Source of the DNA: Ylistrum balloti
Taxonomy: Eukaryota
Assembly: GCF_031769215.1 (NCBI RefSeq)
Contig: NW_026782268.1
Coordinates: forward strand, 2,046,001 to 2,110,000
Direction of reading: 5' to 3'
Length of the DNA: 64,000 bases
Below, in pieces: positions 23,801 to 60,951 of the stretch. Within the stretch, counting starts at the first letter, position 1. Every line of letters starts with the position of its first letter. A program made the translations under genes and the position numbers. The notes under the pieces were generated by a model. The model saw only the letters and a list, made by a program, of their open reading frames with translations. It was not told where the DNA came from and made no database searches.

Positions 23801-25052
23801 TTAATGACAAGTGACCAGTATGAAGCATACTATCAGTTGTATGTAGGAACTGACCAACATTTTTGCTTGTACTTTAATCCTATGTACATGTACACTAATT
23901 CTAAGATAGAAAGTAATGAGATTAGATGGTGAAAAGGTCAAAGAAAAAAGTACACAAGGCGGTAAGAATGTACTGCAGACGCTTTGGCTGTACTTTGCTG
24001 ATATGTAAGACCGTCTCTATGGTTTGTACACGGAGACCTTGCCAAAGCTTTTTTGAGAGTGTGACATTACTTATTTGCATTGACCAACATTTAAATGGTG
24101 GTCATGCGTGTCGTCCTTGAAATAGCGAATAGACGCTTATCTGAGCTGGAACACCTGTTTTGACCTTGTCCCTTGTAAATCTTTCATTTGTTCCCATTTT
24201 ACAACGGTTCACTTCACCATCATGATATTTTGACCCTGGTTCACTACACCATGCATGCTATACAATAACATGTTACGTTGATATTTTTTGTTGTTGTTGT
24301 TTTATATGTAATTTAATCTTAACATACAAGATCTCTGTCGATATCGCTCTATTTTCAACTGACAGAGCCTTCCACAAAATTTTAAAGTGAAGGCTCCAGC
24401 TCAGAGACACCTGACAGGTTCTATCACAAAGAGAGATTCTGATTCAAATCCTGTCAGGAGAAGGTATGTCGTTTTCCTTGTTCTAATTATACTCCAAAGA
24501 ATAAATAGGTATGATTCACACATGAGTGTGCATGGGCCTTTACAGGGAAATTCGGGCGATCTCAAAGTCTGAAATTGAATTGATATACAATCTTCGTCTA
24601 ATTTCTCACTAAGATATGCACAAGTGGTATGCTTTAACACAAAATAATAGCACAAACAAAAAAGCAAGTATATATATTTAAGCTTAAGCACCATAACTTC
24701 TAGCACGTATTTAAGTTTATGGTGTGTGATTTGCTCCACATATAAGCAAAGATATACGAATTGAAACCATTTGTCGATCACTGTAAAATATTGTCCATCA
24801 CCTGGTATGGCCTACCCTACCGGCTTTATATTATCCGACTACGTGATACAGCAGGCCGGTATGTGTATCGGCCCATTCAATGCCACATTATTGAGTTGCA
24901 GGACACACTGATAATCCATCTACCTTAGATTTCACACTGCTTTGGTCCCACTGTGGTTTGACTTTTTTCAACGCCTCAAATCCAGCTGATTCAATTTCAC
25001 TCTCTTCAATACTTAGGTCGAAGTACACCGGCTCCATAGTAGATGCAGCCAT
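14891..25052 (-). CDS. ETNK1: Ethanolamine kinase (choline/ethanolamine kinase family), 8 coding exons, 358 aa
   Basis: Exons on the minus strand: 25052-24924, 21884-21622, 21169-21023, 18969-18827, 18421-18338, 16554-16394, 15468-15395, 14966-14891. All introns are GT-AG, phases are consistent and the total is 1077 nt. Motifs: GGITNKL, IRVFGQKTDLIIDRDAE, Brenner HNDLL, FIDHEY, YDIGNHFCEFAG, HFFWGVWAIIQAKYSTIDFDYL. The symbol denotes the closest vertebrate paralogue. Confidence 0.95.
17221..18310 (+). mobile_element. Non-autonomous Helentron-associated element (HINE-like) with internal tandem repeats, in a kinase intron
   Basis: Subterminal inverted repeats gtcacctga (17245-17253) and tcaggtaac (18296-18304), 3' hairpin gagac-ttt-gtctc (18285-18297), and internal repeats such as ggtcagtcaaggtcaatatgtgca x2 and gaagatttttgaaattt x2. 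Confidence 0.65.
19099..19382. repeat. 19-bp minisatellite (TGACCTTTCTGACCTATTG)n in kinase intron 3
   Basis: Directly visible; about 19 perfect TGACCT hexamers by hand count. Confidence 0.9.
20761..20925. mobile_element. 165-bp MITE
   Basis: Perfect 8-bp TIR CAGGGCTC/GAGCCCTG flanked on both sides by TGACT (20756-20760, 20926-20930). Confidence 0.6.
22130..22580. repeat. Tandem HINE-type core repeats
   Basis: Two to three diverged units with aaaatggc / gccatattggatttt / ggtcaggaccat / tcagctgaat, homologous to 13655-13820 and 23570-23700. Confidence 0.5.
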
Positions 25053-27648
25053 GTTGGATAATGTCACAACAACAATTGAGAGTTATTCCCCTTCGTATAT
25101 GAAAAATCAATCAGATTTGTCAGCTTGAAAAAAAAATCTTATTTGTAATGAAATCGAAGATACAGCTTGGATATCAAGATCAACAAGATGTACAGGCAAA
25201 TTTAAAACAAAATATTTGTTAATCTTAAAAAAGTCTCTGGTCAGATATACCTGAACGGAAATCATGATTTCCGAATAACGACACGATCAAAATTCGACAC
25301 AAAATCTTATTGTCATTGTGAAATGTTCCCGATAAAGTTTAATCATTAAGATTTTTAGAAACAAAGACTTGCTGGCATATTTTATCATATGACTAAACGT
25401 ACATGTGTACATGTACAAACAGCACTTATCTGAACCCGGGAAACATGGGTATAACATCATAACTTATATAACAACGTCCGTGCTAAGATCACCACAATGT
25501 GCATATGGACACATTAAGCCGACTGAGTTGATATACCGACAATAAAAATAACGCATTATCATTTTTTCTTCATTCTCAACTAGAGGTGTATTAAAAACAT
25601 ATTCTATCTCAATGCACCAGCGAGTCTTTTGATTTTTCCCATATAAAAATTAACATTGGGTAAAACATGTACAGGCACCAGTTTTATCTGTCAATACACT
25701 CATATAGATACATTAGCATTATTTTTGTATGGACAGACAAGTTTGGTACCTTTGGGTCGTATCGTTATCAGTTTATTTTGAGTTGTTGATCTCAAAACAA
25801 GACAATACGTATATGCATCTTTACATATTTTAACCACGAAATCGAATTTAAAGGCACATTATTACTTTTAATTAAATAGTATTCTGAGAGCAGCCGAGTT
25901 TGATGTTTTGGATTTTTTTCATGTACCACACACTTCATTGATATTTTTTTCCAATATTTTGTTTTATGTTCAAGAGATTTTCAAACCAACATAAGTTATC
26001 TAAAAAAAATATGTGTAGCTTTGTGTCACAATTTTTTTATTCACAATACCTCTCAAACCAGACTGTTCATAAGTGTGCACTTTCTCTATAAAATTGCATG
26101 GAGATATGTCCAGCCTTTTTGAAAGTGAACTGTATCGATACATTGTGAACTGAAGAATGAGGAAAGTACTATTCTTTCATCGAGATTAGAATGTATGGGT
26201 ACATATGTACCAAAGGATATGGAAAGAAATGAAAGACATGAAAAAGAAAGGGGGAAAGTCATGGGGAAAATAACTCGACAGGAAAAATAGTGTTTTAAAA
26301 GAGAAAAATAGAAGAATTATGTTAAGGAAGGAAATGAGCTGAATAAATTAGATTTAGTGTTAAGATTTCATATTTGTTGTGTTTTCAGGCTAGTTGAGGT
26401 AAGGTTTTAGGTAATTTCAATTCCATTCACCCATTTCCCCCGATAATTAAGAAAATGTTGTAACCAAGAATCACATTTGCCATTATATCGGACCAGAATA
26501 TCAAAGCTAAGTAGATACATATTTAAAATCTTATTACCATAGAAACACCTTTTTCCGATACATAGCCGATGTCCATTTTTTTTATCTCTTATCTATGAGT
26601 AATGGTTTTATCGTTAACACGGAATTCGTTCGAAAAGTTATCAGTTTGTAGTGCACTTTGACACACGGCACGTCGCCAAGGGAAGGTCAGTACTTGGATT
26701 GTAATGCATAGCTGCATTTACGTAAACAACTCAGATTTTGCATGAAGTATAAAAACATGTGTTTTATTCCTTCCTATTCTGGTATTAGTCACAAAATTTC
26801 CCTTGTGACATTTGTCTGTTTGTTTACATACACGATGTAAATGGTCATTAATTCATTCCGATATCTTAAGCATTTGTATTGATTTTTCTTCACTCAATTT
26901 ATTCATTTATCAACGATATTTGAAGAATAGAAATTAATGAAAATGGCTTTGTTTGAATCGGTATCAAAGAGAGCGTTCACTGTGAAAGTAATGGAGGAAG
27001 TTACATGTTAATGTATTGTAAAATATTCACGATAATATCTACTACTAGAGCAAATGTTTCTGAAGTTGTGAATTTATACAGATATATATACTTGATAAAT
27101 ATTAATAAAACATATATGATACATATCAGAAACGATTTCCGGATTACATTTATTACAATACATGAAATCAATGATATGAAGGGAAGTCTCACCAACTAAT
27201 TCTGATTTCCAAGAGTTACTTCCCTTGAACAATAATAATGCATTAACTCTGGTTAGCTTACGTTAAAAGTTTTCATCAAATGTGCGATAGGAATATAGCT
27301 GAATATACATGTGATATATGCTCTACTTATATTTTCTGGTTAAAAAATGTACCCATGGTTTGTATCGGTAAAATAAAATGGTTAAAGTATGGATTTTTTT
27401 AAAAAATTTCCCTCTCTCGCCAGGTAGAGGGGAATTAAAAAGTTCCATGTTTATCAAGCTTATACGTAAACTGTCTATGTTATCTGTGAGATATAAATGT
27501 TGATAAATCTTATGGTTAATACAATTTTTCTTAAAGGTGGATTAACAAAATATAAGTTGATGTAAGTAAGATGTCTAATGAAGATGATAAAAAATAGGCG
27601 AGATAGGATATGATGAACAAAAATGGAGGAGAGAGAACGATGATTGAG

Positions 27649-27861
27649 TTTATTGTTGTTTTACGTCCTATCGACAACTAAGGTCATTTAAGGACGTGTC
27701 AGGTTTAGATGGTGTAGGAAGCCGGAGTACCTGGTGAAAACCACCGACCTGCGCTCAGTACCTGGCAACTGCCCCACGTGAGCCTCGAACACGCGACCCA
27801 GAGGTGGAGGGATATAGTAATTAATTACATTACGCCTTAGCCACTTGGCCACCGCGGCCCC
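27649..27861 (-). mobile_element. Full-length tRNA-derived SINE with 12-bp target-site duplication
   Basis: On the minus strand: A box TGGCCAAGTGG, B box GTTCGAGGC, central GGTTTTCACCAGGTACTCCGGCTTCC (V/Meta-domain-like). TSD ACGATGATTGAG at 27637-27648 and 27862-27873. Confidence 0.88.
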
Positions 27862-31670: not shown

Positions 31671-31715
31671 CCAAGGTTTTAGCCAATGAGGTCAAACAAA
31701 CGTGTGCATATATAA
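31671..31715 (+). promoter_or_regulatory. CCAAT-box element shared with receptor gene 5, followed by a TATA-like sequence
   Basis: GTTTTAGCCAATGAG at 31676-31690 is identical to 51767-51781; TATATAA at ~31709-31715. Confidence 0.6.
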
Positions 31716-31792
31716 TGTTGAAAAATGTTTTATTGATCTGTACTGACCTTTTAAGTCAGCTGTATCATGTTGACATTATATACACACAAAAC

Positions 31793-33079
31793 ATGGCCTC
31801 CTTGTTACTTCTACTCTCTATGTCATTGACAACCATTTGCGGAGCTACTCATGTAGATTTGAAAAAACTTCACCGAGATTTGATGGAAAATTATAACAAA
31901 AACTTACGTCCGACGTTTAACCTCTCACAGCCGACAGAAGTGGATATTCAGTTTTATCTGCTCTCGATAAAAGAATTCGACGAAAAGACCAGCAGATTTG
32001 CTATTGTTGGCGTATTTGTACTAAATTGGAACGACTTTCAGTTGGCATGGGATCCTGATGATTATGGTGGCATTGTAAGTACTGTTTTTCCACAGAACAC
32101 TTTATGGAAACCAGATCTTATACTTATGAATCCATATGAGAAAGTTGAATCTGCCGGCTTTGAGGATCTGAAAATTGTTGTGATTAATAATGGATCTGTT
32201 TTTTGGGCTCCGGTTGACGTTTATGAAGTCACGTGTCCAGCAGATGTAACGTACTATCCGTTTGATCAGCAAACGTGTTCGTTGTTTTTTAGTGTCTATA
32301 TGTATACAGTGTTTGATGTTACTTTGAAACCATCATCAACTCACATATTCACCGATGATTATTCGCCAAACAGTCTTTGGTACTTGAAAGACACAAGCTT
32401 TACAATCATTGAATCACATAACTCACAAACACTGTTGATGAAGACAATGCTTCAGAGAGGACCATTGTTTCAAGTCATAAACACTATAGTACCATTCAAT
32501 ATGTTGGGACTATTGAACATCATGGTGTTCCTTCTTCCTGCCGAATCTGGTGAACGTGTTGGTTTTTCCGTGACGATTCTGTTAGCTATTGCTGTGTTTA
32601 TGACAATTGTGGCGGACACTTTGCCTGGAACCAGCGAACCTTCTTTCCCTCGACTATGTTATTTATTGATAGCACAGTTAGGTGTCAATATGCTTGTGAC
32701 AGTTTTCACTATCTTAATATCAAGACTGCATCATAAACCAAAACAGCAAAATATTCCTTCATGGCTACAAAAAATCATAGGCAAATGTGTTTGTTTCCAT
32801 CCAAAATTCAAATTAATAAATTCAAATGAAAACATCAACAACCAAGATCTTAATAACCCGAACATCGATAGTTTAGAAACTGTTGTATCAATTGTTCAGG
32901 AAGCAAAGAATGTTGATTTAGGAGATGAGGTAAATCACAGACCTCGAAAAGGAGTAAAACACACGTGTAGTAAAATGTCATGGCAGACAGTGGTGAGCTT
33001 TCTCGATGTCTTTTCTTTTCTTTTCTTTCTTGTCATTTATGTATCAAGCATGATAGCCACTTACTTTGTGTTCTGTTAA
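31793..33079 (+). CDS. Intronless divergent nicotinic-type Cys-loop channel subunit, gene 1 (non-alpha)
   Basis: Signal peptide starts MASLLLLLSM (ATG 31793 in aaacATGG; the ORF-track start at 31715 is an upstream extension). WKPD, Cys-loop CPADVTYYPFDQQTC (C-x13-C), M1-M3, M2 GERVGFSVTILLAIAVFMTIVAD, C-terminal M4; no vicinal CC. Confidence 0.93.
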   Translation: MASLLLLLSMSLTTICGATHVDLKKLHRDLMENYNKNLRPTFNLSQPTEVDIQFYLLSIKEFDEKTSRFAIVGVFVLNWNDFQLAWDPDDYGGIVSTVFPQNTLWKPDLILMNPYEKVESAGFEDLKIVVINNGSVFWAPVDVYEVTCPADVTYYPFDQQTCSLFFSVYMYTVFDVTLKPSSTHIFTDDYSPNSLWYLKDTSFTIIESHNSQTLLMKTMLQRGPLFQVINTIVPFNMLGLLNIMVFLLPAESGERVGFSVTILLAIAVFMTIVADTLPGTSEPSFPRLCYLLIAQLGVNMLVTVFTILISRLHHKPKQQNIPSWLQKIIGKCVCFHPKFKLINSNENINNQDLNNPNIDSLETVVSIVQEAKNVDLGDEVNHRPRKGVKHTCSKMSWQTVVSFLDVFSFLFFLVIYVSSMIATYFVFC

Positions 33080-33299
33080 ATTACACTGCACATGTGTATA
33101 TCTTTTCGAAAACATATTTTTGTTTCATCAATTGACATGAGGCTAAATGATGCCAAATGGATGGTAATTGTGAAGTGAATCAATTTCAAAATTTGATGTT
33201 GATCATTCCTAAATTTTTTGACACCAAAATGTTCATTGATGAATTTCGTGTTAAGTGTAAGTTGATATTTTAAGATATGTCATTCAGTTTACCCGAACA

Positions 33300-33960
33300 A
33301 ATCACGAACCTTTGCTAAACAGAGAATTTCACAAAAATTTAGACTTCGGTCAACGCAGGGACGTTGCTACCCAGGAAATGGAAAATCGCATTAAGGATAT
33401 TGAAATCATAACGCTTATCATACAGCCATACTAAAAGCTGCCGTGTTGGTATTGGTATAGGAAAAGATCGAGATAAGCAGCTGATGTAGAAGATAAAAAA
33501 TCTGGTGGATATAAATGTACATGTATAGGATGGACGTGCTCAATAAATGCTAATTTTTTTTAACTATTTAAAGACAAGATGTCTTCGATATATCTGAAAG
33601 TGAAATCAAAGGACCTTTCAAGGTCTTAATGGCCTGTTTTGATAGGCTCTTCGATATATTCAGCGTCGTATGAAAAAAAAAAAAAACCAAGGGTACAGTT
33701 AGTTCCTATATGTATGCCGATAGTCTGTAGAGAGATCTTGTCACTAAAATATTTATAATTCTCAAATTGATTGTGATAACGTTTGTGAGAAATAATATCT
33801 GTGTTAATTTTGAAATTTTAAAAACAAAATGCAGGTTTAATTTATTTACAACTGCAATGCCTCGTATACTTTATATTACTTTCAGTCCGAAATATAAGAA
33901 AATCATCTTTAAAAAAATTGGCATTAAAACAGAGTGGAGGCATGTAAGTTTGTGATACAT
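33300..33960 (-). mobile_element. Decayed Penelope-like RT fragment
   Basis: Minus strand reads QTIGIHIGTNC (QxxGIPMGTNC-like), SFDFTFRYIEDILSL (YxDD region), SSTSAAYLDL and DKRYDF. Confidence 0.7.
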
Positions 33961-34754
33961 GTATGTCAGTTTAATTCATTGGTATTGGATTTGTTACGAA
34001 AATTAAAAAAAAAAAAAAAAAAAAAACTACAACTTTCCGTACGAACGGGTTAGGATAGTTTTTATTCTTTTATGATAAATGTATTACATGTATTTTATAA
34101 ACCACCTCAAAAGTGGATGGATGTAGAAAAAGATGCTATACAACAGGGGAATAGAACAGAACAATACATACGTAATGGAGGGCGATTCTGATTTCAGTAG
34201 TTTGTCTGGATATGCCATTATGACAATAAAATAAATTTTTCAAGACTGTTTTGTCTATAATGACAAACAGCAAGCCATCCCAACCAATCTATTCATATAA
34301 TGGATGGACTGTACAAATAAAACTCTTGGGATTTAAAAAAATTCTTGATGAAAAAGGTTACCTTGTGAAATCAATATGGTGTTTAGAACAGTTCACCGTC
34401 ACTTAATATCACCTGCTTTGATGTTAAAGCCACAACAGGTTGATATTTTATTGAATAGTTGTAGTTTACAACCCAGGATAACCATTCAAATAAGAAATGA
34501 TTGACTCACTCACTCACCTACCCACTCAATCATCGGACCTTTATTCCGTTTCCTATGGGGATATCAGTTTATCAGTTTTAATGAGCGGTTATTGTTTCCT
34601 CCAAATCGATATTTTGCAATAAATCTTTATCCTATTTTTAACGTCATTTGAGCTTTAAGTGTATTGTTCCAGTTAATGCACTCAGTATTATTGCGTGGAA
34701 ATTCATTGATCAATCTTATTCTATCTAAGCCAGTTGATAGTAACACACGAAAAA

Positions 34755-36062
34755 ATGACGTTCTTTCTATTTCTTCTCTCAGCGTATTTGACAACCATTT
34801 ACGGAGCAACTCATGTAGATCTGAAAAGACTTAACCAAAACTTGATGTCAAATTACAGCAAACATTTGCGCCCGACATTTAACCTCTCTCAACCAACAGA
34901 ATTAGATGTCATTTTTCATGTTTCTTCAATAAAGGAATTTGAAGAAAAGACCAGCAGATTTTCTATGTTTGGAGTATTTATGATTTATTGGCATGACTTT
35001 CAGTTAGAATGGAATCCGGACGATTACGGTGGCATTGTAAGTACAGTTTTCCCACAGAGCTCTTTGTGGAAACCAGACCTATTACTTTTAAACCCATATG
35101 AGAAAGTTGAACCTGCTGGCTTCGACGATCTCAAGATCATTGTAAATTACAACGGATCTGTGTACTGGTCTCCAGCTAATGTTTATGAGGTCACGTGTCC
35201 AGCAGATGTAACATATTATCCGTTTGATCAGCAAACATGTCCGTTGTATTTTGGTGTCTACATGTATACCATTTTTGATGTGACTTTGAAACCATTATCT
35301 TCTGGTATAACAACTATTTATTATTTCCCAAACAGTGTCTGGCACTTGGTAAATGTAAGCTCTAGTATTCATCCATCACTTGACACGGAAATACTCATCC
35401 TGACAATAGTACTTCAACGACGATCAATGTTTCAAGTCATAAACACTATAGTACCATTCAGTATGTTGGGACTGTTGAACATCATGGTGTTCCTTCTTCC
35501 TGCCGAATCTGGTGAACGTGTTGGTTTTTCCGTGACGATTCTGTTAGCTATTGCTGTGTTTATGACAATTGTGGCGGACACTTTGCCTGGAACCAGCGAA
35601 CCTTCTTTCCCTCGACTATGTTATTTATTGATAGCCGAACTCTTTATCAATACGTTGGTTACGATTTCTACCATTTTGTTACTAAGACTACATCACAAAC
35701 CCAAGCAACAGACCATTCCAACTTGGTTGCAATATCTCATATGTTTTTGTTTTAAAACTAAAAACAAGACCCAACCTATAGAGGAAGACATCCAAGGTAT
35801 TAGCAATGAAGATAACTTCATAATTAAAACCATTGTACCCAAGGTTCAGGAAACAAAGACAGATAAAGGAGTAAGGAAGGATTCTGATTTGAACGGAGAT
35901 GACACAATTAACGGGAAATGCCCTATCTGTAGAGGAAAAAAATATGTTTGTAATGAGTCGTCATGGCAGACTTTGGCGAGCTTTCTCGATATCTTTTTCT
36001 TTCTGTTGTTTCTTGTCTTCTTTGTTTCATGTAAGGTTGTAGCTTATTTTGTATATATTTAA
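34755..36062 (+). CDS. Intronless divergent nicotinic-type Cys-loop channel subunit, gene 2
   Basis: First ATG at 34755 (MTFFLFLLSAYLTTIYG signal peptide); Cys-loop CPADVTYYPFDQQTC; four TM segments; M2 identical to gene 1. Confidence 0.93.
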   Translation: MTFFLFLLSAYLTTIYGATHVDLKRLNQNLMSNYSKHLRPTFNLSQPTELDVIFHVSSIKEFEEKTSRFSMFGVFMIYWHDFQLEWNPDDYGGIVSTVFPQSSLWKPDLLLLNPYEKVEPAGFDDLKIIVNYNGSVYWSPANVYEVTCPADVTYYPFDQQTCPLYFGVYMYTIFDVTLKPLSSGITTIYYFPNSVWHLVNVSSSIHPSLDTEILILTIVLQRRSMFQVINTIVPFSMLGLLNIMVFLLPAESGERVGFSVTILLAIAVFMTIVADTLPGTSEPSFPRLCYLLIAELFINTLVTISTILLLRLHHKPKQQTIPTWLQYLICFCFKTKNKTQPIEEDIQGISNEDNFIIKTIVPKVQETKTDKGVRKDSDLNGDDTINGKCPICRGKKYVCNESSWQTLASFLDIFFFLLFLVFFVSCKVVAYFVYI

Positions 36063-36367: not shown

Positions 36368-38149
36368 GTCAAATTATAAGAACCGGATGAACCGGTAAGG
36401 AGCAAAACATTTCTTTTTTTTGGAAATACATGAAGCAAAACAAAGAGTACACTGTTATGTGCCTATATTTAAAAAGAATACTACAAAAAAAGCGAATATT
36501 TTGGGATATATGTTGATTATTAATTGTTGTGCTAAATACCGATATGAAGGACAACATCAATATTATAATGATCATTAAAACTGCCTCGTTTAGCTATGAC
36601 TCGTAATAGTTCGGTCAAATGATACCTCTTCTATCATCTATCAGTATTCCGATTGACTTCATCAATATATAGTAACGAGGTATTGATTCAAATCATATAC
36701 ATTTTTCAAATGGCGCTTGACTACTATGATTGCCAATATCGCAGTCGTGTGGCGTACTTTATGCTTCATCTTTTTGGCTGTATTAGAATTATGATATTGT
36801 TTATGTTGTTTGTACATCCTGGTTGACATTGTTGTTACCATGTCTGTCATGTTATTCGTCATTTAATAAAATTACATTACTGGCTGTATGTTTTTCTTGG
36901 TTGTTATTGATAAATAACATACCCAAAACAGCTGAAGTCGTGACTCAATTATCGCGAGGGAAATTATAACATAAATACCTTTTATGTAACAATGATATCA
37001 CATTTTACATTTGCAGACAATGTACATTAGTAGAAAACTTTTTAATTTGCTTTGCAATACACATGTTGCCGATAATAATATAAATGATTGATGATACCAA
37101 TGAAATAAATTACTCGAAACATTAACGTCTACTGATCGTATCAATACTTATGATATCTAAACACATCGAACAGTGCCAGTAATTTCAACACAATGAAAAT
37201 ATGTCAATAAGGTGTAGAATATCACATTAACACAAACGCAATTGGTTTTGTTTCGATATTTGAAAGTTCACGTGGCAATTATTTAGATATTAGATCCAAA
37301 TGGAAGGCAAACATTATGAGTACATTTATTACAAGCCAGACTTCTCTATTAGATAGACTATTAAACAATCTAAACTATTACCTAGTGTTTGGATTCTCCT
37401 TTTGTGTCCCAAAATTACAAATACTTAGAAAAGTTTGACGTAATGTTTACATACACGAATAATGATAAATAGGACACAACACAAATAATACCTTAAGGTA
37501 TAATTCTAATTGTATATGACACTATTACGTGTGCCATTGTTGACCAGAAAAAGAACTTGACGCGTAGATCGAATTAAAAAAGAGATATTGTTGAAATACT
37601 ATATTGTTTCCTTGTCTTGGAAAAAAGACACATATAAACAAATCTAAGAAATTATCGATTTTGCTTGTAACAAACATTTACTCATTTTTCGATTTTTCAA
37701 AAATATTTTGTTTTCATATTGTGAACGTTAATACTGATATTGTTTCACTTAATGTCGCTTAAAATTGAAAATTATTGATCGACGATTTATCTGTTTTTAT
37801 TTTCTAAGGAGATTATAAAATATGTACATTGTGTATAGCAATGCTGCAGAATAATATTGTGTATGTAGATAAATGACGTGTGTTTGGTAGCAGGACGCCA
37901 AACATCCAGTCTTTGTTATAGTAATGTATTGAAAAGAAGGTTCCATGATAAGTGACCTTATTCATTTTTCAATAGGAAAAAATCCTTTGTTCTTTAAGAT
38001 TTACCATTGACGATGGTATGATGACGGCAGTTACATGAAGTTACAGCATGGCACTTTCACAAAATTAAGTCAGGATGCAGGATTACAATTGCTTTTTTCC
38101 GGGTGGAAAAACTAACTAAACATTATGTGTGACGCATTTTTTTCCTGAA

Positions 38150-39160: not shown

Positions 39161-40462
39161 ATGGCATCCGTGTTATTTCTTCTCTGTATGTCATTGACAA
39201 CCATTTACGGAGCCACTCATGTAGATCTGAAAAGACTTCACCAAAACTTGATGTCAAATTACAGCAAACATTTGCGCCCGACATTTAACCTCTCTCAACC
39301 AACAGAATTAAATGTCATTTTTCATGTTACTTCAATAAAGGAATTTGAAGAAAAGACCAGCAGATTTTCTATGTTTGGAGTATTTATGATTTATTGGCAT
39401 GACTTTCAGTTGGAATGGAATCCGGACGATTACGGTGGCATTGTAAGTACAGTTTTCCCACAGAGCTCTTTGTGGAAACCAGACCTATTACTTTTAAACC
39501 CATATGAGAAAGTTGAACCTGCTGGCTTCGACGATCTCAAGATCATTGTAAATTACAACGGATCTGTGTACTGGTCTCCAGCTAATGTTTATGAGGTCAC
39601 GTGTCCAGCAGATGTTACATATTATCCGTTTGATCAGCAAACTTGTGCGTTGTATTTTGGTGTCTACATGTATACCATTTTTGATGTGACGTTGAAACCA
39701 TTATCCTCTGGTATAACAACTATTTATTATTTCCCAAACAGTGTCTGGCACTTGGTAAATGTAAGCTCTAGTATTCATCCATCACTTGACACGGAAATAC
39801 TCATCCTGACAATAGTACTTCAACGACGATCAATGTTTCAAGTCATAAACACTATAGTACCATTCAGTATGTTGGGACTGTTGAACATCATGGTGTTCCT
39901 TCTTCCTGCCGAATCTGGTGAACGTGTTGGTTTTTCCGTGACGATTCTGTTAGCTATTGCTGTGTTTATGACAATTGTGGCGGACACTTTGCCTGGAACC
40001 AGCGAACCTTCTTTCCCTCGACTATGTTATTTATTGATAGCCGAACTCTTCATCAATATGTTGGTTACGATTTCTACCATTTTGTTACTAAGACTACATC
40101 ACAAACCCAAGCAACAGACCATTCCATCTTGGTTACAATATCTAATGAGTAATTGTGTTTGTTTTAAAACCAAAACCGAAATAGAAAATGTAGAGGAAAA
40201 TCCAAAATACACCAATGATGTTACCAATGTAAACAACATTGTTATTGAAACAGAGGAAATAGACATCAGATTGGAGAACGATTATGATTTAAAGGGAGAC
40301 GACACAAAAACCGGATACTGCCTTGCTTGTAGAAAAAGGAAATATGTTTGTAATGAGCCGTCATGGCAGACTTTGGCGAGCTTTCTCGATGGCTTTTTCT
40401 TTCTGTTTTTTCTTGTTTTATTCGTTGCATGTAATATTGCAGCTTATTTTGTTTACGTTTAG
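39161..40462 (+). CDS. Intronless divergent nicotinic-type Cys-loop channel subunit, gene 3
   Basis: 433-aa ORF with signal peptide, Cys-loop and four TM segments; 933 nt are colinear with gene 2 at offset 4406. Confidence 0.94.
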   Translation: MASVLFLLCMSLTTIYGATHVDLKRLHQNLMSNYSKHLRPTFNLSQPTELNVIFHVTSIKEFEEKTSRFSMFGVFMIYWHDFQLEWNPDDYGGIVSTVFPQSSLWKPDLLLLNPYEKVEPAGFDDLKIIVNYNGSVYWSPANVYEVTCPADVTYYPFDQQTCALYFGVYMYTIFDVTLKPLSSGITTIYYFPNSVWHLVNVSSSIHPSLDTEILILTIVLQRRSMFQVINTIVPFSMLGLLNIMVFLLPAESGERVGFSVTILLAIAVFMTIVADTLPGTSEPSFPRLCYLLIAELFINMLVTISTILLLRLHHKPKQQTIPSWLQYLMSNCVCFKTKTEIENVEENPKYTNDVTNVNNIVIETEEIDIRLENDYDLKGDDTKTGYCLACRKRKYVCNEPSWQTLASFLDGFFFLFFLVLFVACNIAAYFVYV

Positions 40463-45320: not shown

Positions 45321-46670
45321 TCAAATAGAATCAGATATCGAGTTGTTAGCTTGAGAAAATACAAAATAGGCGACTATCTTGAGTGAACCAAAACAGATGA
45401 AGAACATCACAAATAAAAAGACATCGAGGAATTTTGCAAAACTCCGCCATGATGTTTTATCACAAAACTGTTTTCTTTTTGTTTCAGTCATCTGGTTATC
45501 TTGTACCGTAATATTGTTCCATTTATGGTCGTTTTCACTTTTTGTAATACTCCTCTCTGCATCATGATTCTTTGACGTAATGTTATCAATAGAAATGATG
45601 GCTTGATTGTTCAAATCTTTCTTCATGTTTATTTCCGTGGCATTTTCAATTTTCCGATTGCGATGGGAGCAAATACATTTGCATATGGCATAATTCAGCC
45701 ATAGAGGAACTGTCTGGTGATCGGGTTTATAATGCAATCTTAGGACTAAGATGGTAGAAATTGTCACAAGAGCATTGACGCAGAGTTCAGTTGTCAGTAT
45801 ATAAAACAGTCGAGGAAAAGAAGGCTCGCTTGTTACTGGTAGAGTGTCTGCTACAATTGTCATAAACACAGCTACAGCTAGCAAGACAGTGACAGAAAAT
45901 CCAACTCGTTCACCAGATTCAAATGGCAAAAGAAAAACCATGATGTTTAAAAGTCCAAGAATGCTAAAAGGTACTATGGTATTTATTATTTGAAACATCG
46001 GTCGACGTTGTAAAAACATTGTTACCACAAATGTTTGGCTTTCCAATTCAGTAACAACAGACATATTAGCATTTGTTACGTCCCAAAGGCTGTTTGGATA
46101 ATAATAGTCTAAAATCATGTTCGTTGGCATTGATTCAAGGAATACATCAGATACAGTCATCATGAACGCAGAGAAATATAAGGAACACATTTGTCGATCA
46201 AATGGATAAAACTTAACATCAGCTGGACATGTGACCTCAAATACATCGGGGGGTACCCAAAGCATAGTCCCATAATAATTCACTGTGATTCTTAGGCTGT
46301 CGTATCCTGGAGGCTCAATTTTATCGTATGGGTTTAATAATATCATGTCAGGTGTCCAAAGAAGACTCTGGCGGATAAATATTTGTTCAATACCACCAAA
46401 TTCATCTGGATTCCACTTCATTCGGAAATCAATCCAGGAAAATATAAACATTCCAACAATGGCAAACTTACTTGTCTTTTCGTCGAATTCTTTCAAAGAC
46501 AAAATCTGAAAGCCGACATACACTCTTGTTGGCTGTGAGAGATCTGACGTGGGACGTAACTCCTTATTATAGTTTGACGTCAACGTTTGGTAAAGTCTGG
46601 TCAAGTTTTCATGTGTTGTCCCATATGTCGTTGTAGTGGAAACGGCGAGAAGCAAAAGTAGCCACATCAT
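45321..46670 (-). CDS. Intronless divergent nicotinic-type Cys-loop channel subunit, gene 4 (inverted)
   Basis: 449 aa; signal peptide MMWLLLLLAVS, WTPD, Cys-loop CPADVKFYPFDRQMC, M2 GERVGFSVTVLLAVAVFMTIVAD. Confidence 0.94.
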   Translation of the reverse strand: MMWLLLLLAVSTTTTYGTTHENLTRLYQTLTSNYNKELRPTSDLSQPTRVYVGFQILSLKEFDEKTSKFAIVGMFIFSWIDFRMKWNPDEFGGIEQIFIRQSLLWTPDMILLNPYDKIEPPGYDSLRITVNYYGTMLWVPPDVFEVTCPADVKFYPFDRQMCSLYFSAFMMTVSDVFLESMPTNMILDYYYPNSLWDVTNANMSVVTELESQTFVVTMFLQRRPMFQIINTIVPFSILGLLNIMVFLLPFESGERVGFSVTVLLAVAVFMTIVADTLPVTSEPSFPRLFYILTTELCVNALVTISTILVLRLHYKPDHQTVPLWLNYAICKCICSHRNRKIENATEINMKKDLNNQAIISIDNITSKNHDAERSITKSENDHKWNNITVQDNQMTETKRKQFCDKTSWRSFAKFLDVFLFVMFFICFGSLKIVAYFVFSQANNSISDSI

Positions 46671-47780: not shown

Positions 47781-48680
47781 TTGTTATCTTCACTGAGCGA
47801 CGTATGAAACAAAAATGTTGTAGCTACAATTACTTGCGTATATTTCAGTGACAAACGAAGTTACACCACGGTTCTGTGGCTTCAATCCCAAACAAAAGTG
47901 GACAATGGGTTTTAACCTTCTTTCATTAAAGGCGCTTATATGAAATTCAAGCAAATTTTCTTTAGTTGGAGCATTTTCATTGAACTGGCATGATTTTCGA
48001 TTGTTATGGGATACTGATAATAAGATTTTGAATTGAGTATGTGTTTTTTCAGAGCATTTATAATGTCACATGATAAACACCTTACCAGGAACCAGTGAGC
48101 ATCATTCCTTCGGTTGTGTGACCTATTGACAGTAGGGCTCTGTGTCAATATGTTTGAAAAACTGTGCCATTTTGGTATAAAACTACATCATTAACCAAAA
48201 CATCATACCATTCCGTCATGTCTGCTAAACATGATATGCAAATGCAGCTGTTGTAAAAACTCAAAACCGAAATAAGAAGCATTAAGGAATATCACATGAA
48301 CAAAGACAATCTAGGTTTCGTTTGTTTGGAAGCCTTGGCAATCAAGCCTCAGGAAGCTGAGAAAACTGACATGGAACAATGATATTATCGTCAATTTAAA
48401 CAGTATGACTCAAACAAGCAGAACATGCTATACAAGCAAAACATCATGGCATAATGTGGCAAAGTTTCTCGATATCTTCCTCCTTGTTTTCTTCCAGGTG
48501 ATAATCGGATGTAACAAAACAATGGCTTATTTCGTATTTACTTCAAATAATCAAATATGTGTGAAGTGAATCTTGTAGATTGAGTCTTTCCTATTTCAGA
48601 AAGATACCTTATGATTAATGTTTAGATAATAATAAAGACGCTGGTAAAACCAAGCATTGCCGTTATGATATGTTTTTGCA
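47781..48680 (+). pseudogene. Internally deleted receptor pseudogene, paralogue of gene 5
   Basis: Aligns to gene 5 from the 5' end (gaaacaaaaATGTTGTAG versus ATGTTGTGG, a nonsense change at codon 3) through ECD start, M3, loop and M4 (tatttacttcaaataa) to the 3' UTR aataaagacgctggtaaa. It carries frameshifts and two large deletions. Confidence 0.88.
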
Positions 48681-51882: not shown

Positions 51883-53217
51883 ATGACATCCGAAACAAAA
51901 ATGTTGTGGTTACTAGTGCTTGCGTATATTTCTGTGTCAAACGCAGCTACACATGAGGATTACAGATTGCTTCACCAAACATTGATGACAAACTATACCA
52001 AAGTACTGCGTCCGACGTTTAACTCGTCCATTCCAACGACAGTGGACATTGGATTTTATCTTCTCTCGTTAAAGGAATTTGAAGAGAAGTCAAGCAAATT
52101 TTCTGTTGTTGGAGCGTTTTCAATGACCTGGCATGATTTTCAATTGGTATGGAATCCTGATAATTATGGTGGAATTGAATATACATTTTTTCCGCAGAGC
52201 TCTTTGTGGAAACCTGACATCCTTCTTGTGAATCCTTATGAGAAACTTCAATCTCCCGGTTTTGACGATCTAAAGATCTTAGTTCGGAAAGATGGAATCG
52301 TGAATTGGTCTCCACCTGACATTTATGATGTCACATGTCCATCAGATGTAACATATTATCCTTTTGATCAGCAAATATGTTCATTGCATTTCGCAGTATA
52401 TATGCATACCACATATGAAGTCTTTTTAGAGCCAAGGTCTCCTTACATTAATTTAGACTATTATTCACCCAACAGTCTTTGGGATGTGAAAAACGCCAAT
52501 TTGATTGTTGATCCTGTCTTCACAACACAAACGCTGATACTGGAAACCGTACTGCAGAGAAGACCAATGTTTCAAGTTATAAATACGATAGTACCGTTCA
52601 GTATTTTAGGATTGTTGAATATAATGGTGTTCCTTCTTCCTGCCGAGTCTGGGGAACGTGTTGGCTTTTCCGTGACTGTTCTTTTGGCTGTTGCCGTGTT
52701 TATGACCATTGTGGCCGACACTTTGCCGGGAACCAGCGAACCTTCTTTCCCTCGGTTGTGTTATCTATTGACAGCAGAGCTCTGTGTCAATACCTTTGTG
52801 ACAATTTGTACCATTTTGGTCTCGAGACTGCATCATAAACCAAAGCACCATACCATTCCATCATGGCTGCAAAACATGATATGTAAAGGTGGCTGTTTTA
52901 AAACTAAAACAGACCTAAGTAGTATCGATAAAAAACACACTGAACAGGATCTGAACAATGGAGACATCGTTTGTTTGGGTGACTCTTCGACAAAAACTCG
53001 GAAAGCTGAGAAAACTGACACAGGATATGAAAAGGATTATGAATGGAACAGTGATAGTATTGTCAATGGAAACAGTGTCACTCAAAAATGTTTTAAAAGC
53101 AACACGTCATGGCATACTGTGGCAAATTTTCTCGATATTTTCTTCTTTGTTACATTTCTAGTAATTTCCGCATGTAACAAAATAGTGGCTTATTTTGTAT
53201 TTACTTCAAATAAATAA
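51883..53217 (+). CDS. Intronless divergent nicotinic-type Cys-loop channel subunit, gene 5
   Basis: 444 aa (alternative start 51901); signal peptide, Cys-loop CPSDVTYYPFDQQIC, four TM segments; AATAAA at 53267-53272. Confidence 0.94.
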   Translation: MTSETKMLWLLVLAYISVSNAATHEDYRLLHQTLMTNYTKVLRPTFNSSIPTTVDIGFYLLSLKEFEEKSSKFSVVGAFSMTWHDFQLVWNPDNYGGIEYTFFPQSSLWKPDILLVNPYEKLQSPGFDDLKILVRKDGIVNWSPPDIYDVTCPSDVTYYPFDQQICSLHFAVYMHTTYEVFLEPRSPYINLDYYSPNSLWDVKNANLIVDPVFTTQTLILETVLQRRPMFQVINTIVPFSILGLLNIMVFLLPAESGERVGFSVTVLLAVAVFMTIVADTLPGTSEPSFPRLCYLLTAELCVNTFVTICTILVSRLHHKPKHHTIPSWLQNMICKGGCFKTKTDLSSIDKKHTEQDLNNGDIVCLGDSSTKTRKAEKTDTGYEKDYEWNSDSIVNGNSVTQKCFKSNTSWHTVANFLDIFFFVTFLVISACNKIVAYFVFTSNK

Positions 53218-54722: not shown

Positions 54723-54989
54723 AGTTTTATTCTGCTTGTTTATATTTTAATAGTTCTCTTCTTCTTACCAAATCAGGTGGATATACTAACGTTTAATATC
54801 TGCTCTCTTTCCACTCATTAGTTGTATGAAGAAATCGATCTGATATGGGTTATTCAGATGAAAATGTTCTTATGGGATTTTAAATAATGGCTACAAAATA
54901 AGTAATACTGATCAGTAACGGTACGACCTAGTGATTCGTCGGACGTATTATAGTAGTAAATTTATAACTAAATGAGAATCGACACAAAA

Positions 54990-55240
54990 ATGATGTGGCT
55001 ACTGTTTCTTAGTTCTATTTCCCAAACTGCACACGTAGCAACACGAGAGGACTTGACAAAAATTTTGATGGAAAAGTATACCATGGATTTTCATTCAACA
55101 TTCAACTTCTTACAGTCAACAATAGTTTTGGTTTTCAGCTCCTCTCATTGAAGAAATAAGCAGGCAAATTGCAGTTGTATGATGTATATTCATATTGGCA
55201 TGACTTTAAAATGTAAAGGATTCCTGGAAAATTATGAAAT
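54990..55240 (+). pseudogene. 5' remnant of a receptor pseudogene
   Basis: ATG 54990 reads MMWLLFLSSISQTAHVATREDLTK (compare gene 4 MMWLLL..TTHENLTR); shifted frames then give GFQLLSLKK and WHDFKM. Weaker homology may extend to ~55510. Confidence 0.7.
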
Positions 55241-58140: not shown

Positions 58141-59604
58141 AGTTGATTCTGAAATTAAACATACGAAAATTGTGTTTACATGTGTGAAAGGATGCACAAA
58201 TTCGTAGATGTGTAAAATGTTTGCATGCCTGTGTGTGTATATGTGAACAAGTATACATATTTGTATGAGAATGATAAAAGTAATATCATGATACTTTTTC
58301 CAATTCTTTACCTGATGCCAGCAGGTTCATGGAGCTTTGATGCATGAAATCAAAGTTCGTTTATCTGTAAAATGTATTTTGTACAGGTGTGTTTCATTGT
58401 CTTAATGTATTTGTTTATTGCATATTGCTGCCGTTGTTTTACTGTACAATGTGCAAATATTTAATGTATAGGGTCTCAATTGGTGAATAAAATGTTTAAT
58501 TTACAATCATATGCACACTTTCTCCTCATAATATTGAAATAATGATATTTATAGTGTGAAGAAATGAAAATGAATTTACGAACGAAAAGAAAGAGACCTA
58601 CTGCGTGAGATACCATGATGTAAGGAAGGGAAGATAAACTAAGGGTCCCGACCTTGGCATCCCTCAAAATAGTTCTTGAAGAGAAATTAAGAAAAAGATA
58701 TTTGAATACCACTATATTTTGTAGAAGGATAGTCGTCTTTTGCTTCACAGACGATGTCACGTTATCATAATGAGAGCCAAGTAATTAACAATAACTAGGA
58801 ATGCTAACTAATACAGAGAAACGCTTAATTGCATGTCGTATACGCAAAATAATATTTTCTGACGAGATTTGAAAAACAGTGATTATCTTGTGATTGTAGA
58901 GGTAAGGCATGAACTCCCCTTACTTAATAAGGGACATGCGTAATGTACGAAGAGAAGAATATCATATAATGTAATGGTTATTACGACTAGTATACAAAAG
59001 AACCTTTGAATGATTTTAGATATTCGGTAAATGGAAGAATATTAATGTTGTTGAAAGAAAAAGCTATTGATAGTTCCTGTTTTAAAGATAAGTTATCTAA
59101 ACGGTGAACTGAATGATCATCGCATAATTCATAATTCCTGAAGACCTCGCAATACGTAACGCAAAATGAACGCCTTGTCAGAGCTATGTGTGATGTTTAT
59201 ATTGTAATATAAAGTCTCAGGAACATGGGGACACTAACACTATCAAAGAACGAACAATCAATTAACTTCAATATGGTACAATTAAATGTATCTGGTGGTC
59301 CGGATGTTTCCAGTGTACACAACAATTCCATAAAGATGTATAGATGTCCAATGTGTCACTACATCTACTGATCTGCATACAGAGAAATAAAGCTGGTAAA
59401 TACAAATGTTACATATAATCACTAGACAACGACTTAATAGAGTGTTATTCAACTTTGGATAGGCATTGATTTAGCTTGATTACAGTCAAGTCAAACACAC
59501 CTCGATTTCATTGGGCATCGGTAAATATCGATTTAATCTATCTGGTTTTATAACAAACCATAAAAGCATAAGCAGTGACAACAATTTCACTGCTATATCC
59601 AGAG

Positions 59605-60951
59605 ATGAAGGAAGCTACATGTATATCGACTCTCACGTTGATGTTCCTTTTGACGGGTTCTGGCGATGCAGCAACGCACACAGATATGGTCAAACTCCAT
59701 GAGAACTTGACGAAACATTACAACAAGTATGTCAGGCCAACTTTTAATCAGTCAGAGCCAACAATTGTTAATGTCAATTTCAACCTTCTTTCTATCAAAG
59801 AACTGGATGAAAAGACCAATAAATTGGCTATAGTAGGAATTTTTACATACTCATGGAATGACTTTCAACTCCAGTGGAATTACACGGATTTTGGCAACAG
59901 TATTACAACATTTCTGCCTCAGACGGCAGTGTGGAAACCCGACGTTATACAAGTTAACCCATATGATGAAATTGAACCTCTCGGTTATGACAGACAAACA
60001 ATTCGGGTCGTATACAACGGAGATATGTACTGGGCCCCAGCAAATGTCTACCAGTCTAGTTGTGCTATTGATGTGACGTTTTATCCCTTTGATGTCCAAT
60101 CTTGTTTCATAATGTTTAGCTCTTTGATGTACGATATATCGGAGTTACGTTTCGAAAGCAATAATACTATGCTAGACCTTTCATACTTCTACTCAAATGG
60201 CTTGTGGGAGGTCAAGGCAACAGGAATACATTGTGACAAGTCATCACCGCTTATTATTTTAATATTGCAACTAAAAAGGCGATCAATATTCCATGTTCTT
60301 AACACGTTGATACCTATCAGTGTCATAGGACTTTTGAATGTCTTGGTATTCTTGCTCCCTGCAGAGTCAGGAGAGCGTGTCAGCTTCTCGATTACTGTAT
60401 TATTAGCAATGGCTGTGTTTATCAGTATTGTGACGGACAGTCTACCCAGTAACAGTGAGCCGAATGTCCCGTTTCTGTGTTACCTTCTTGCAATCGATCT
60501 AGGCGCGAATGCTTTAGTAACCGTTTGCGCCATTCTTGGATTGCGTCTCCATCACAAACCAGACTCTCAGAAGGTCCCCAAATGGCTGAAGAGACTAATG
60601 TCCTGCCGTCCAAGCATTAAAAAGAAGAGCAGGTGTACCGATACACGCTTAGAATCTGACAATAGCATGGAGAGTTGGAATAATTCTTCTCCAGAACAGA
60701 TTAAACACATTTACTTTAATGAATCTGCAATTTCCCGGCCAAGTGAAAAAACATTCAAATACGAGCAACAAGATGTCAATGACACTGATCAAAAGACTGT
60801 GTTATCTACTCAGGAACCCTCTAAAAACATTACATGGAAAAATGTCGCAGTGGTCTTGGACATTGTTTTCTTCGTGTTATTTTTAATGGTTTTACTTGCT
60901 AAAGATGTTGTGGCAGTAATTATATTTTTGCAATCACAAAACTATTCTTAA
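59605..60951 (+). CDS. Intronless divergent nicotinic-type Cys-loop channel subunit, gene 6 (most divergent)
   Basis: First ATG 59605 (the track start 59575 is GTG); signal peptide ends GDA|ATH; WKPD; Cys-loop CAIDVTFYPFDVQSC; M2 GERVSFSITVLLAMAVFISIVTD; M4 present. Confidence 0.93.
   Translation: MKEATCISTLTLMFLLTGSGDAATHTDMVKLHENLTKHYNKYVRPTFNQSEPTIVNVNFNLLSIKELDEKTNKLAIVGIFTYSWNDFQLQWNYTDFGNSITTFLPQTAVWKPDVIQVNPYDEIEPLGYDRQTIRVVYNGDMYWAPANVYQSSCAIDVTFYPFDVQSCFIMFSSLMYDISELRFESNNTMLDLSYFYSNGLWEVKATGIHCDKSSPLIILILQLKRRSIFHVLNTLIPISVIGLLNVLVFLLPAESGERVSFSITVLLAMAVFISIVTDSLPSNSEPNVPFLCYLLAIDLGANALVTVCAILGLRLHHKPDSQKVPKWLKRLMSCRPSIKKKSRCTDTRLESDNSMESWNNSSPEQIKHIYFNESAISRPSEKTFKYEQQDVNDTDQKTVLSTQEPSKNITWKNVAVVLDIVFFVLFLMVLLAKDVVAVIIFLQSQNYS

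What the first reader, a model, noticed from the sequence alone, without database searches (positions are those of the whole stretch)
31980..32465. Aromatic box dismantled and loop C shortened and hypervariable in all six subunits
By-eye alignment to vertebrate alpha7: loop D W55 becomes V/V/V/M/A/I; loop A Y93 (WKPDILLYN) becomes M/L/L/L/V/V; loop B W149 (FGSWTY) becomes Y/Y/Y/F/Y/L; loop C has no Y-x-CC..Y. The stretch from the beta9 Trp to the pre-M1 basic motif is 28 aa (26 in gene 6) versus 34 in alpha7, and is almost unalignable between paralogues (IIESHNSQT, IHPSLDTEI, VVTELESQT, VDPVFTTQT, HCDKSSP). This suggests open, more hydrophobic pockets tuned to different non-cationic ligands.
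Basis: partly seen in the sequence, partly recalled or inferred. Interest (0 to 1): 0.75.

Follow-up and report, generated by a model that had tools for sequence, protein, structure and literature searches.

The report
Scallop nicotinic-like channels without acetylcholine pocket
Six intact single-exon genes in a row in a scallop genome encode nicotinic-receptor-like cation channel subunits that lack the usual acetylcholine-binding residues and have a short, fast-evolving loop C; this is real, but it is a trait of a bivalve-wide gene expansion already described, and what the channels sense is unknown.

Summary

The window is from a scallop, apparently Ylistrum balloti. The six genes are intronless tandem members of the bivalve nAChR expansion (Jiao 2019). 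The scan has already reported a similar array elsewhere in this genome.

Most of the "dismantling" is family-wide. None of 117 homologues has the loop D Trp or a CC pair, and 61 have the same loop C length. Only the loop B Trp-to-Tyr change is specific to the scallop clade. Torpedo beta1, a non-binding structural subunit, carries nearly the same residues (F/M/Y).

Loop C is the fastest-evolving part of the ectodomain: omega about 0.6, against 0.16 for the scaffold and 0.1 for the pore. That is no faster than the cytoplasmic loop. It stays below 1, and no site tests as positively selected.

The pocket positions are more hydrophobic than in alpha7. "Tuned to different non-cationic ligands" remains untested. 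There is no special kinship to octopus or squid chemotactile receptors. Verdict: a new member of a known kind, of modest interest.

The parts
31715..33079 (+). Gene 1, an intronless Cys-loop (nAChR-like, non-alpha) subunit. The ORF is 454 aa; the likely start is Met27 at 31793 (428 aa, = P0001).
   Evidence: ORF list. Pfam Neur_chan_LBD 1e-43 plus Neur_chan_memb. AF2 pLDDT 87.7.
31980..32465 (+). The finding's stretch: gene 1 residues 89-250, from loop D to pre-M1. Loop D V100 is at 32012-32014, loop A M138 at 32126-32128 and loop B Y195 at 32297-32299.
   Evidence: HMMER alignment to alpha7. Coordinates.
32378..32458 (+). Gene 1 loop C hairpin, from the beta9 Trp222 to the pre-M1 Arg248. It is 27 aa with no vicinal Cys.
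34734..36062 (+). Gene 2 (likely start Met8 at 34755). Its loop C lies at 35340-35420 and is identical to that of gene 3.
39161..40462 (+). Gene 3. Its loop C lies at 39746-39826.
45321..46670 (-). Gene 4. Its loop C lies at 46005-46085. It is orthologous to Pecten maximus P0004 and Argopecten P0008 and P0012.
51883..53217 (+). Gene 5 (likely start Met7 at 51901). Its loop C lies at 52480-52560.
59575..60951 (+). Gene 6 (likely start Met11 at 59605). Its loop C lies at 60205-60279 and is 25 aa long. It belongs to a separate subclade with Ylistrum P0018, and the protein alignment groups an Argopecten cluster member with them.
47800..48560 (+). Dead copy. It has N-terminal (about aa 2-94) and C-terminal (about aa 287-443) similarity to gene 5, carries several stop codons, and lacks the middle of the gene.
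   Evidence: tblastn.

Best explanation
The six genes encode working, cation-selective subunits of the nicotinic branch of the Cys-loop family. They cannot bind acetylcholine in the canonical way on either face of the subunit.

They arose by retroposition and tandem duplication, as part of the bivalve nAChR expansion. The short CC-less loop C and the loss of the loop D Trp and loop A Tyr are old traits of this non-alpha family. The loop B Trp-to-Tyr/Phe change arose on the stem of a scallop-specific clade.

The gating and pore module is almost frozen. The loops around the former agonist site (C most, then F, E, D and B) are the least constrained part of the ectodomain and have drifted towards smaller, aliphatic residues.

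My committed reading, which is inferred and not shown: these are orphan ligand-gated channels. A non-acetylcholine ligand sits in a shallower, more hydrophobic interface groove anchored by the conserved loop B Tyr. It opens the conserved cation pore through the retained Cys-loop, beta1-beta2 and pre-M1 coupling elements, with paralogues differing in what they accept.
For: Shown:
- Pfam LBD and TM domains in all six genes. nAChR fold, with alpha7 at Z 31.5 and 28% identity.
- A 13-residue Cys-loop, four TM helices, -1' Glu and 9' Leu in M2, and the pre-M1 Arg and M2-M3 Pro kept.
- Purifying selection: ECD omega 0.235, scaffold 0.16-0.17, M1-M3 0.095.
- Orthologous intronless tandem arrays in Pecten maximus and Argopecten irradians, with a shared choline-kinase flank.
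- A scallop-specific clade with 100/100 support.
- Aromatic-box substitutions that are family-wide.
- Pocket-homologous positions more variable than the rest of the ECD (p = 0.007), while the loop B Tyr is conserved in 13 of 14.
- All 10 sites with a point estimate of omega above 1 lie in loops D, E, F or C.
- A hydrophobic shift relative to alpha7 and Torpedo beta1.
- A dead copy in the array, indicating birth-and-death turnover.

Literature:
- Bivalve nAChR expansion, intronless and tandem, with most members lacking conserved binding sites (PMC6896357).
- Divergent molluscan clades with substituted binding residues (PMC13174522).
- Cephalopod CRs as a precedent for nAChR-derived sensors of hydrophobic ligands (PMC11526382; bioRxiv 10.1101/2025.03.03.641191).
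Against: - No ligand, expression or assembly data exist. No RNA run holds the gene.
- Loop C and pocket omegas are below 1 and equal to the cytoplasmic loop, so relaxed constraint alone suffices.
- No site is significantly above 1.
- Torpedo beta1, a non-binding structural subunit, shows the same F/M/Y pattern.
- Gene 5's pocket positions are not hydrophobic.
- Orphan lophotrochozoan relatives such as Alpo4 have resisted deorphanisation (PMC10338036).
Confidence: 0.45

Rival explanations
1. They are accessory (structural) subunits, like vertebrate beta1, beta3 or alpha5. They bind no agonist themselves and co-assemble with acetylcholine-binding alpha-type subunits encoded elsewhere. The former pocket is vestigial and drifts, and paralogue diversity tunes assembly, kinetics or localisation rather than ligand choice.
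For: - Torpedo beta1 has F/M/Y at the W55/Y93/W149 positions and also a short CC-less loop C, almost the scallop pattern.
- Loop C omega of 0.6 is about that of the cytoplasmic loop and below 1, with no positively selected site.
- M1-M3 is nearly identical among paralogues and species, as expected if they must fit common partners.
- NCBI names the orthologues 'beta-like'.
Against: - The pocket positions are markedly more hydrophobic than in beta1.
- The loop B Tyr and the loop C length are conserved, which is unexpected for a dead site.
- Lineage-specific tandem birth-and-death with dozens of such genes per genome is unusual for purely structural subunits (PMC6896357).
Confidence: 0.33
2. They are still gated by acetylcholine, choline or another small amine, through a non-canonical site that uses the conserved loop B Tyr (Phe in gene 4) for a cation-pi contact.
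For: - The loop B aromatic is the best-conserved pocket residue (Tyr in 13 of 14 sequences, entropy 0.37 bits).
- The loop E position after Q117 is an invariant Trp.
- From my own knowledge, loop B Tyr or Phe carry the cation-pi contact in GABA-C and glycine receptors.
Against: - Four of the five box aromatics are gone, including the complementary-face Trp.
- Gene 6 has Leu at loop B.
- No acidic or other obvious cation-coordinating residue was found at the eight mapped pocket positions.
Confidence: 0.15
3. They are retrocopies on the way to becoming pseudogenes, and the variable loops simply reflect decay.
For: - One dead copy and one fragment lie in the array.
- Jiao 2019 reports that more intron-poor than intron-rich copies have low or no expression (PMC6896357).
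Against: - All six ORFs are intact, with signal peptide, Cys-loop and four TM helices.
- Omega is 0.16 in the scaffold and 0.095 in M1-M3.
- Orthologous arrays are kept in three scallop genera.
Confidence: 0.03

Closest known systems
Expanded intronless, tandem nAChR genes of bivalves (Jiao et al. 2019, PMC6896357; molluscan clades in MolluscaGenes, PMC13174522)
   Same: These are single-exon genes in a tandem array with lineage-specific duplication. They are non-alpha, with canonical binding residues not conserved. Orthologous arrays occur in Pecten and Argopecten.
   Different: Those papers do not describe this Ylistrum array, the loop-by-loop substitution pattern, the scallop-specific loop B Trp-to-Tyr step, or the regional omega values.
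Cephalopod chemotactile receptors CRT1 and CRB1
   Same: They are nAChR-derived, intronless, tandemly expanded and cation-selective. The canonical acetylcholine box is lost and the orthosteric site is more hydrophobic, with variation concentrated in pocket loops.
   Different: There is no close kinship: 22-24% identity and Z 22.8-24.0, against 28% and Z 31.5 for human alpha7. Neither is among the 60 best PDB matches of the family profile, where even 5-HT3A ranks. CR pocket residues (Y58, W122, F124, F192) are aromatic and under demonstrated positive selection (bioRxiv 10.1101/2025.03.03.641191). Here they are mostly aliphatic and omega is below 1. No ligand or sensory expression is known.
Vertebrate or Torpedo muscle beta1 subunit (structural, non-binding)
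   Same: It has F/M/Y at the W55/Y93/W149 positions, no vicinal Cys, a shorter loop C, and conserved pore and gating elements.
   Different: The scallop loop C is about 3 residues shorter still, and the pocket positions are far more hydrophobic. The scallop genes form multi-copy, lineage-specific arrays rather than a single conserved gene.
Alpo4, an orphan nAChR-like receptor of Alvinella pompejana (PMC10338036)
   Same: It is a lophotrochozoan nAChR-like orphan without the CC tip that does not respond to acetylcholine. A hydrophobic sterol derivative binds at its orthosteric site.
   Different: Alpo4 keeps the aromatic cage (F103, W159, Y199, Y205, W65). The scallop genes do not. Identity is 23% and Z is 25.8.

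Membership tests
Cys-loop pentameric ligand-gated ion channels | Neur_chan_LBD plus Neur_chan_memb domains, a Cys-loop with 13 residues between the cysteines, and four TM helices | tested here: met
   Pfam E-values of 1e-41 to 1e-43 for all six genes. C-x13-C is present in all six. The AF2 model has the beta-sandwich and helices at 224-247, 254-276, 287-313 and 397-427. Fold matches reach Z 32.7.
Cation-selective nicotinic-type pore | A -1' Glu, 9' Leu and an acidic 20' ring in M2, with no anionic Pro-Ala-Arg motif | tested here: met
   M2 aligns to alpha7 M2 with G-E-R at -2' to 0', Leu at 9' and Asp at 20'. Selectivity itself was not measured.
Alpha-type nAChR subunit | Vicinal Cys-Cys at the tip of loop C | tested here: not met
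   No CC in any of the six genes or in any of 117 homologues.
Canonical acetylcholine-binding site | Principal-face aromatics Y93, W149, Y188 and Y195 | tested here: not met
   Y93 becomes M/L/L/L/V/V and W149 becomes Y/Y/Y/F/Y/L. Loop C is 6-8 residues shorter, with no Tyr pair.
Canonical acetylcholine-binding site | Complementary-face loop D Trp (W55) | tested here: not met
   W55 becomes V/V/V/M/A/I. No Trp at this column in 117 homologues.
Bivalve expanded intronless nAChR genes (Jiao 2019) | Intronless genes, a tandem array and lineage-specific duplication | tested here: met
   Six uninterrupted ORFs lie within about 29 kb. The genes fall in a Pectinidae-specific clade with 100/100 support, and genes 1-3 form a Ylistrum-only subclade. 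Pecten and Argopecten arrays are also single-exon.
Cephalopod chemotactile receptors | Membership of the CR clade | tested here: not met
   CRB1 gives 22% identity and Z 24.0; CRT1 gives 24% and Z 22.8. Both are lower than alpha7 at 28% and Z 31.5. Neither is in the top 60 PDB profile hits. No cephalopod is among the 120 listed protein hits. No joint tree with CR sequences was built.
Cephalopod chemotactile receptors | Diversifying selection on pocket residues | tested here: inconclusive
   The pocket and loop C are the fastest-evolving ECD parts, but omega is 0.49-0.63 and no site is significantly above 1. Power is low: 15 genes and a tree length of 11 substitutions per codon.
Cephalopod chemotactile receptors | Activation by poorly soluble hydrophobic ligands and expression in sensory epithelium | not testable with these tools
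   No RNA run holds the gene, and no functional data exist.
Structural (beta1-like) nAChR subunit | Obligate co-assembly with agonist-binding alpha subunits | not testable with these tools
   The residue pattern matches Torpedo beta1. Assembly cannot be tested here.

The most novel reading that the evidence does not exclude
Scallops independently turned a branch of non-alpha nicotinic subunits into an ionotropic chemoreceptor repertoire for hydrophobic or otherwise non-cholinergic cues. This would be convergent with, not homologous to, the cephalopod chemotactile receptors. A conserved loop B Tyr would serve as anchor, with paralogue-specific loops C, E and F setting specificity.
Probability: 0.2. 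Interest if true: 0.65.

Novelty: new member of a known kind. Interest (0 to 1): 0.3.

Why it matters
Bivalves carry 100-200 nicotinic-like genes, and the function of nearly all of them is unknown. This array gives a compact set of candidates for deorphanisation: five distinct ectodomains on an almost invariant pore. Because the pore is shared, differences in response could be assigned to loops C, E and F. If the channels prove to be sensors, neurotransmitter receptors would have been recruited as chemoreceptors at least twice within molluscs. If they prove to be accessory subunits, that would show that an acetylcholine-site-deficient sequence is not evidence of a new ligand.

Tried and rejected
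- Laying that run gave no usable allele data. Gene 1 showed four differences (one synonymous; T209A, T244A, G413R). Several of the gene 2 differences (D58N, S64T, T307M) match gene 3 residues, so that contig probably includes cross-mapped gene 3 sequence.
- Pairwise Nei-Gojobori dN/dS among the six paralogues: dS is saturated (above 1 or undefined) in all pairs except gene 1 vs genes 2/3 and gene 2 vs gene 3. I therefore fetched Pecten and Argopecten CDS and used a tree-based codon model instead.
- A direct residue-level alignment to CRT1 could not be made. CR chains never reached the top matches of the PDB sequence searches, and the Allard 2023 and van Giesen 2020 papers are not held. Only structure-level Z scores and identity were obtained.
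- I considered a conserved loop E Arg plus loop B Trp pair as a family-wide ligand motif lost in the scallop clade. It is present in only 26 of 102 other homologues, so I dropped it.
- Pentamer modelling and pocket volume are not possible with the tools.
- HyPhy and codeml are not installed. The site test was my own FEL-like likelihood with synonymous branch lengths fixed from an IQ-TREE GY model.

Full report
**What is there.** The window carries six uninterrupted ORFs of 433-458 aa: 31715-33079 +, 34734-36062 +, 39161-40462 +, 45321-46670 -, 51883-53217 + and 59575-60951 +. All six have the Cys-loop receptor ligand-binding and transmembrane Pfam domains, with E-values of 1e-41 to 1e-43 for the LBD. 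The finding's coordinates, 31980-32465, are residues 89-250 of gene 1, from loop D to the pre-M1 arginine. A dead copy with stop codons and a missing middle lies at 47800-48560. A short N-terminal fragment lies at 54972-55106.

**Origin.** The window's own proteins sit on a 2,168,601-bp contig that also carries NCBI proteins named for Ylistrum balloti. A paralogue of gene 6 was fetched from the Ylistrum assembly GCA_031769215.1. The best relatives are from Pecten maximus and Argopecten irradians at 52-60% identity, then other bivalves. No cephalopod appears among the 120 listed hits.

| alpha7 position | genes 1 / 2 / 3 / 4 / 5 / 6 |
|---|---|
| loop D W55 | V / V / V / M / A / I |
| loop A Y93 | M / L / L / L / V / V |
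| loop B W149 | Y / Y / Y / F / Y / L |

- There is no vicinal Cys pair. HMMER places gaps totalling six residues in loop C.
- From the beta9 Trp to the aligned pre-M1 Arg there are 27 residues in genes 1-5, 25 in gene 6 and 33 in alpha7.
- AlphaFold2, with a 104-sequence alignment (mean pLDDT 87.7), models loop C as a regular hairpin. In P0001 numbering the strands are 196-208 and 211-222, joined by a two-residue turn, at pLDDT above 95.
  - Genes 2 and 3 share an identical loop C.
  - Genes 1-5 align without gaps.
  - An aromatic residue survives at loop B in five of the six genes.

**How special is it?** Not very, within the family.
- In a MAFFT alignment of 117 homologues, none has Trp at the loop D column, two have Tyr at the loop A column, and none has CC. 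Loop C has the same 27-residue length in 61.
- Only the loop B Trp is widely kept, in 67 of 117. It is replaced by Tyr or Phe in all 15 members of the clade that holds genes 1-5, and by Leu or Ser in gene 6 and its paralogue.
- On the ML tree, genes 1-5 fall in a Pectinidae-only clade with 100/100 support. Genes 1-3 form a Ylistrum-specific subclade. Gene 4 is orthologous to Pecten and Argopecten genes.
- The Pecten and Argopecten genes also form intronless tandem arrays. The choline-kinase exon that flanks the Pecten array matches window 24921-25061 on the minus strand, so the locus is syntenic.
- Torpedo beta1, which takes no part in agonist binding, has F, M and Y at the three key positions.
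- This is the bivalve nAChR expansion described by Jiao et al. 2019: 99-217 genes, often intronless and tandem. In oyster only 13 of 33 alpha-type subunits keep the principal binding site (PMC6896357).
- A 2026 preprint likewise reports divergent molluscan clades with substituted binding residues, and a 'CR-like' clade that reaches bivalves (PMC13174522).

**Selection.**
- Among the six paralogues, synonymous divergence is saturated except for gene 1 vs genes 2/3 (dS about 0.83) and gene 2 vs gene 3.
- In the gene 1-gene 2 pair, loop C dN is 0.66-0.67, the same as the cytoplasmic loop (0.69). Loop C omega is about 0.8 (bootstrap 0.4-1.4, or up to 1.7 for the tip), against 0.14 for the ECD scaffold.
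- I then took the coding sequences of nine Pecten and Argopecten genes of the clade. With genes 1-5 this gave 15 genes, to which I fitted an IQ-TREE GY+F3X4 model. Global ECD omega is 0.235.

| Region | omega, ECD branch lengths fixed | omega, free branch lengths |
|---|---|---|
| ECD scaffold | 0.16 | 0.17 |
| Cys-loop | 0.07 | |
| loop A | 0.15 | |
| loops D / E / B / F | 0.31 / 0.34 / 0.31 / 0.36 | |
| loop C | 0.59 (tip) | 0.63 (whole loop) |
| eight pocket-homologous positions | 0.49 | |
| cytoplasmic loop | 0.59 | 0.46 |
| M1-M3 | | 0.095 |

- Loop C against omega fixed at 1 (kappa also fixed, at 1.8) gives 2dlnL = 5.8.
- A per-site FEL-like test finds no site significantly above 1. All ten sites with a point estimate above 1 lie in loops D, E, F or C, and none lies in the 117 scaffold codons.
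- At protein level, the loop C tip has entropy 1.99 bits against 0.95 for the scaffold (p = 3.5e-5). It is indistinguishable from the cytoplasmic loop (2.08). The eight pocket positions are more variable than the rest of the ECD (p = 0.007). The loop B Tyr is conserved in 13 of 14 sequences.
- Conclusion: the agonist-site loops are the least constrained part of an otherwise strongly constrained protein. Their rate is near-neutral, not demonstrably adaptive. The second half of that criterion, absence of a pocket, could not be tested.

**Pocket character.** At the eight mapped positions the Kyte-Doolittle sums are -3.8 for alpha7 and -1.6 for Torpedo beta1. The six genes score +16.5, +9.7, +9.7, +22.2, +0.2 and +6.5. 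Summed side-chain volumes are 11-29% below alpha7. 'More hydrophobic' therefore holds for five of six genes. 'Open' is an inference from the short hairpin.

**Relation to chemotactile receptors.**
- Structure comparison over PDB representatives gives alpha7 Z 31.5 (28% identity), Alpo4 Z 25.8 (23%), squid CRB1 Z 24.0 (22%) and octopus CRT1 Z 22.8 (24%).
- The family profile's 60 best PDB matches are vertebrate and Torpedo nAChR subunits and 5-HT3A, not CRs.
- So there is no special kinship. Any functional resemblance would be convergent.
- CR pocket residues are aromatic and reported to be under positive selection (bioRxiv 10.1101/2025.03.03.641191; PMC11526382), unlike here.

**Mechanism.**
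- Shown: the genes are intact, conserved and selected. The pore looks cation-type (-1' Glu, 9' Leu, 20' Asp). The coupling elements are kept: the Cys-loop YPFD motif, the beta1-beta2 Glu, the pre-M1 Arg and the M2-M3 Pro.
- Inferred:
  - The canonical acetylcholine site is non-functional on both faces.
  - Gating, if ligand-driven, uses a remodelled hydrophobic groove.
- I put about 0.45 on orphan non-cholinergic ligand-gated channels, 0.33 on beta1-like accessory subunits, 0.15 on a non-canonical amine site using the loop B Tyr, and 0.03 on decay.
- No expression data could be obtained.

**Verdict.** It is a new member of a known kind.

Noticed in passing
window 47800-48560 (+) and 54972-55106 (+): There is a dead copy of the receptor gene. 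It is 46-47% identical to gene 5 over the N-terminal ~94 aa and C-terminal ~155 aa, carries several in-frame stops, and lacks the middle of the gene. A separate ~47-aa N-terminal fragment lies further on. Both point to birth-and-death turnover in the array.
   Followed up: partly
window 24921-25061 (-), also ~27658-27800 (-): An exon-like match, 74% amino-acid identity over 47 aa, to the choline-kinase gene that flanks the Pecten maximus receptor array (L003 from 20612). The array's flank is therefore syntenic between the two scallops.
   Followed up: partly
window, M1-M3 of genes 1-3 (about 32460-32720 in gene 1): Synonymous divergence between gene 1 and genes 2/3 drops from about 0.83 in the ectodomain to 0.20-0.22 in M1-M3.
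   Followed up: partly
window 34734-36062 vs 39161-40462: Genes 2 and 3 are mosaics. The ECD and M1-M3 are almost identical (dS 0.02-0.05), but the cytoplasmic loop is as diverged as between old paralogues (dS 0.79, dN 0.33). This suggests either conversion of the 5' two-thirds of the gene or a swapped 3' part.
   Followed up: partly
window 33270-33670 and 36820-37015: These intergenic stretches have very high contig depth (up to about 1700 against about 10) and many alternative joints in the one DNA run. They are probably dispersed repeats or mobile-element fragments between the receptor genes.
   Followed up: no
L007:12866-14188 (+) (Argopecten irradians): In the protein alignment an Argopecten gene with gene-6-type motifs sits inside the Argopecten array, right next to a gene-4-type copy. 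The gene 6 lineage may therefore be an old member of the same array. No tree with this gene was built.
   Followed up: partly
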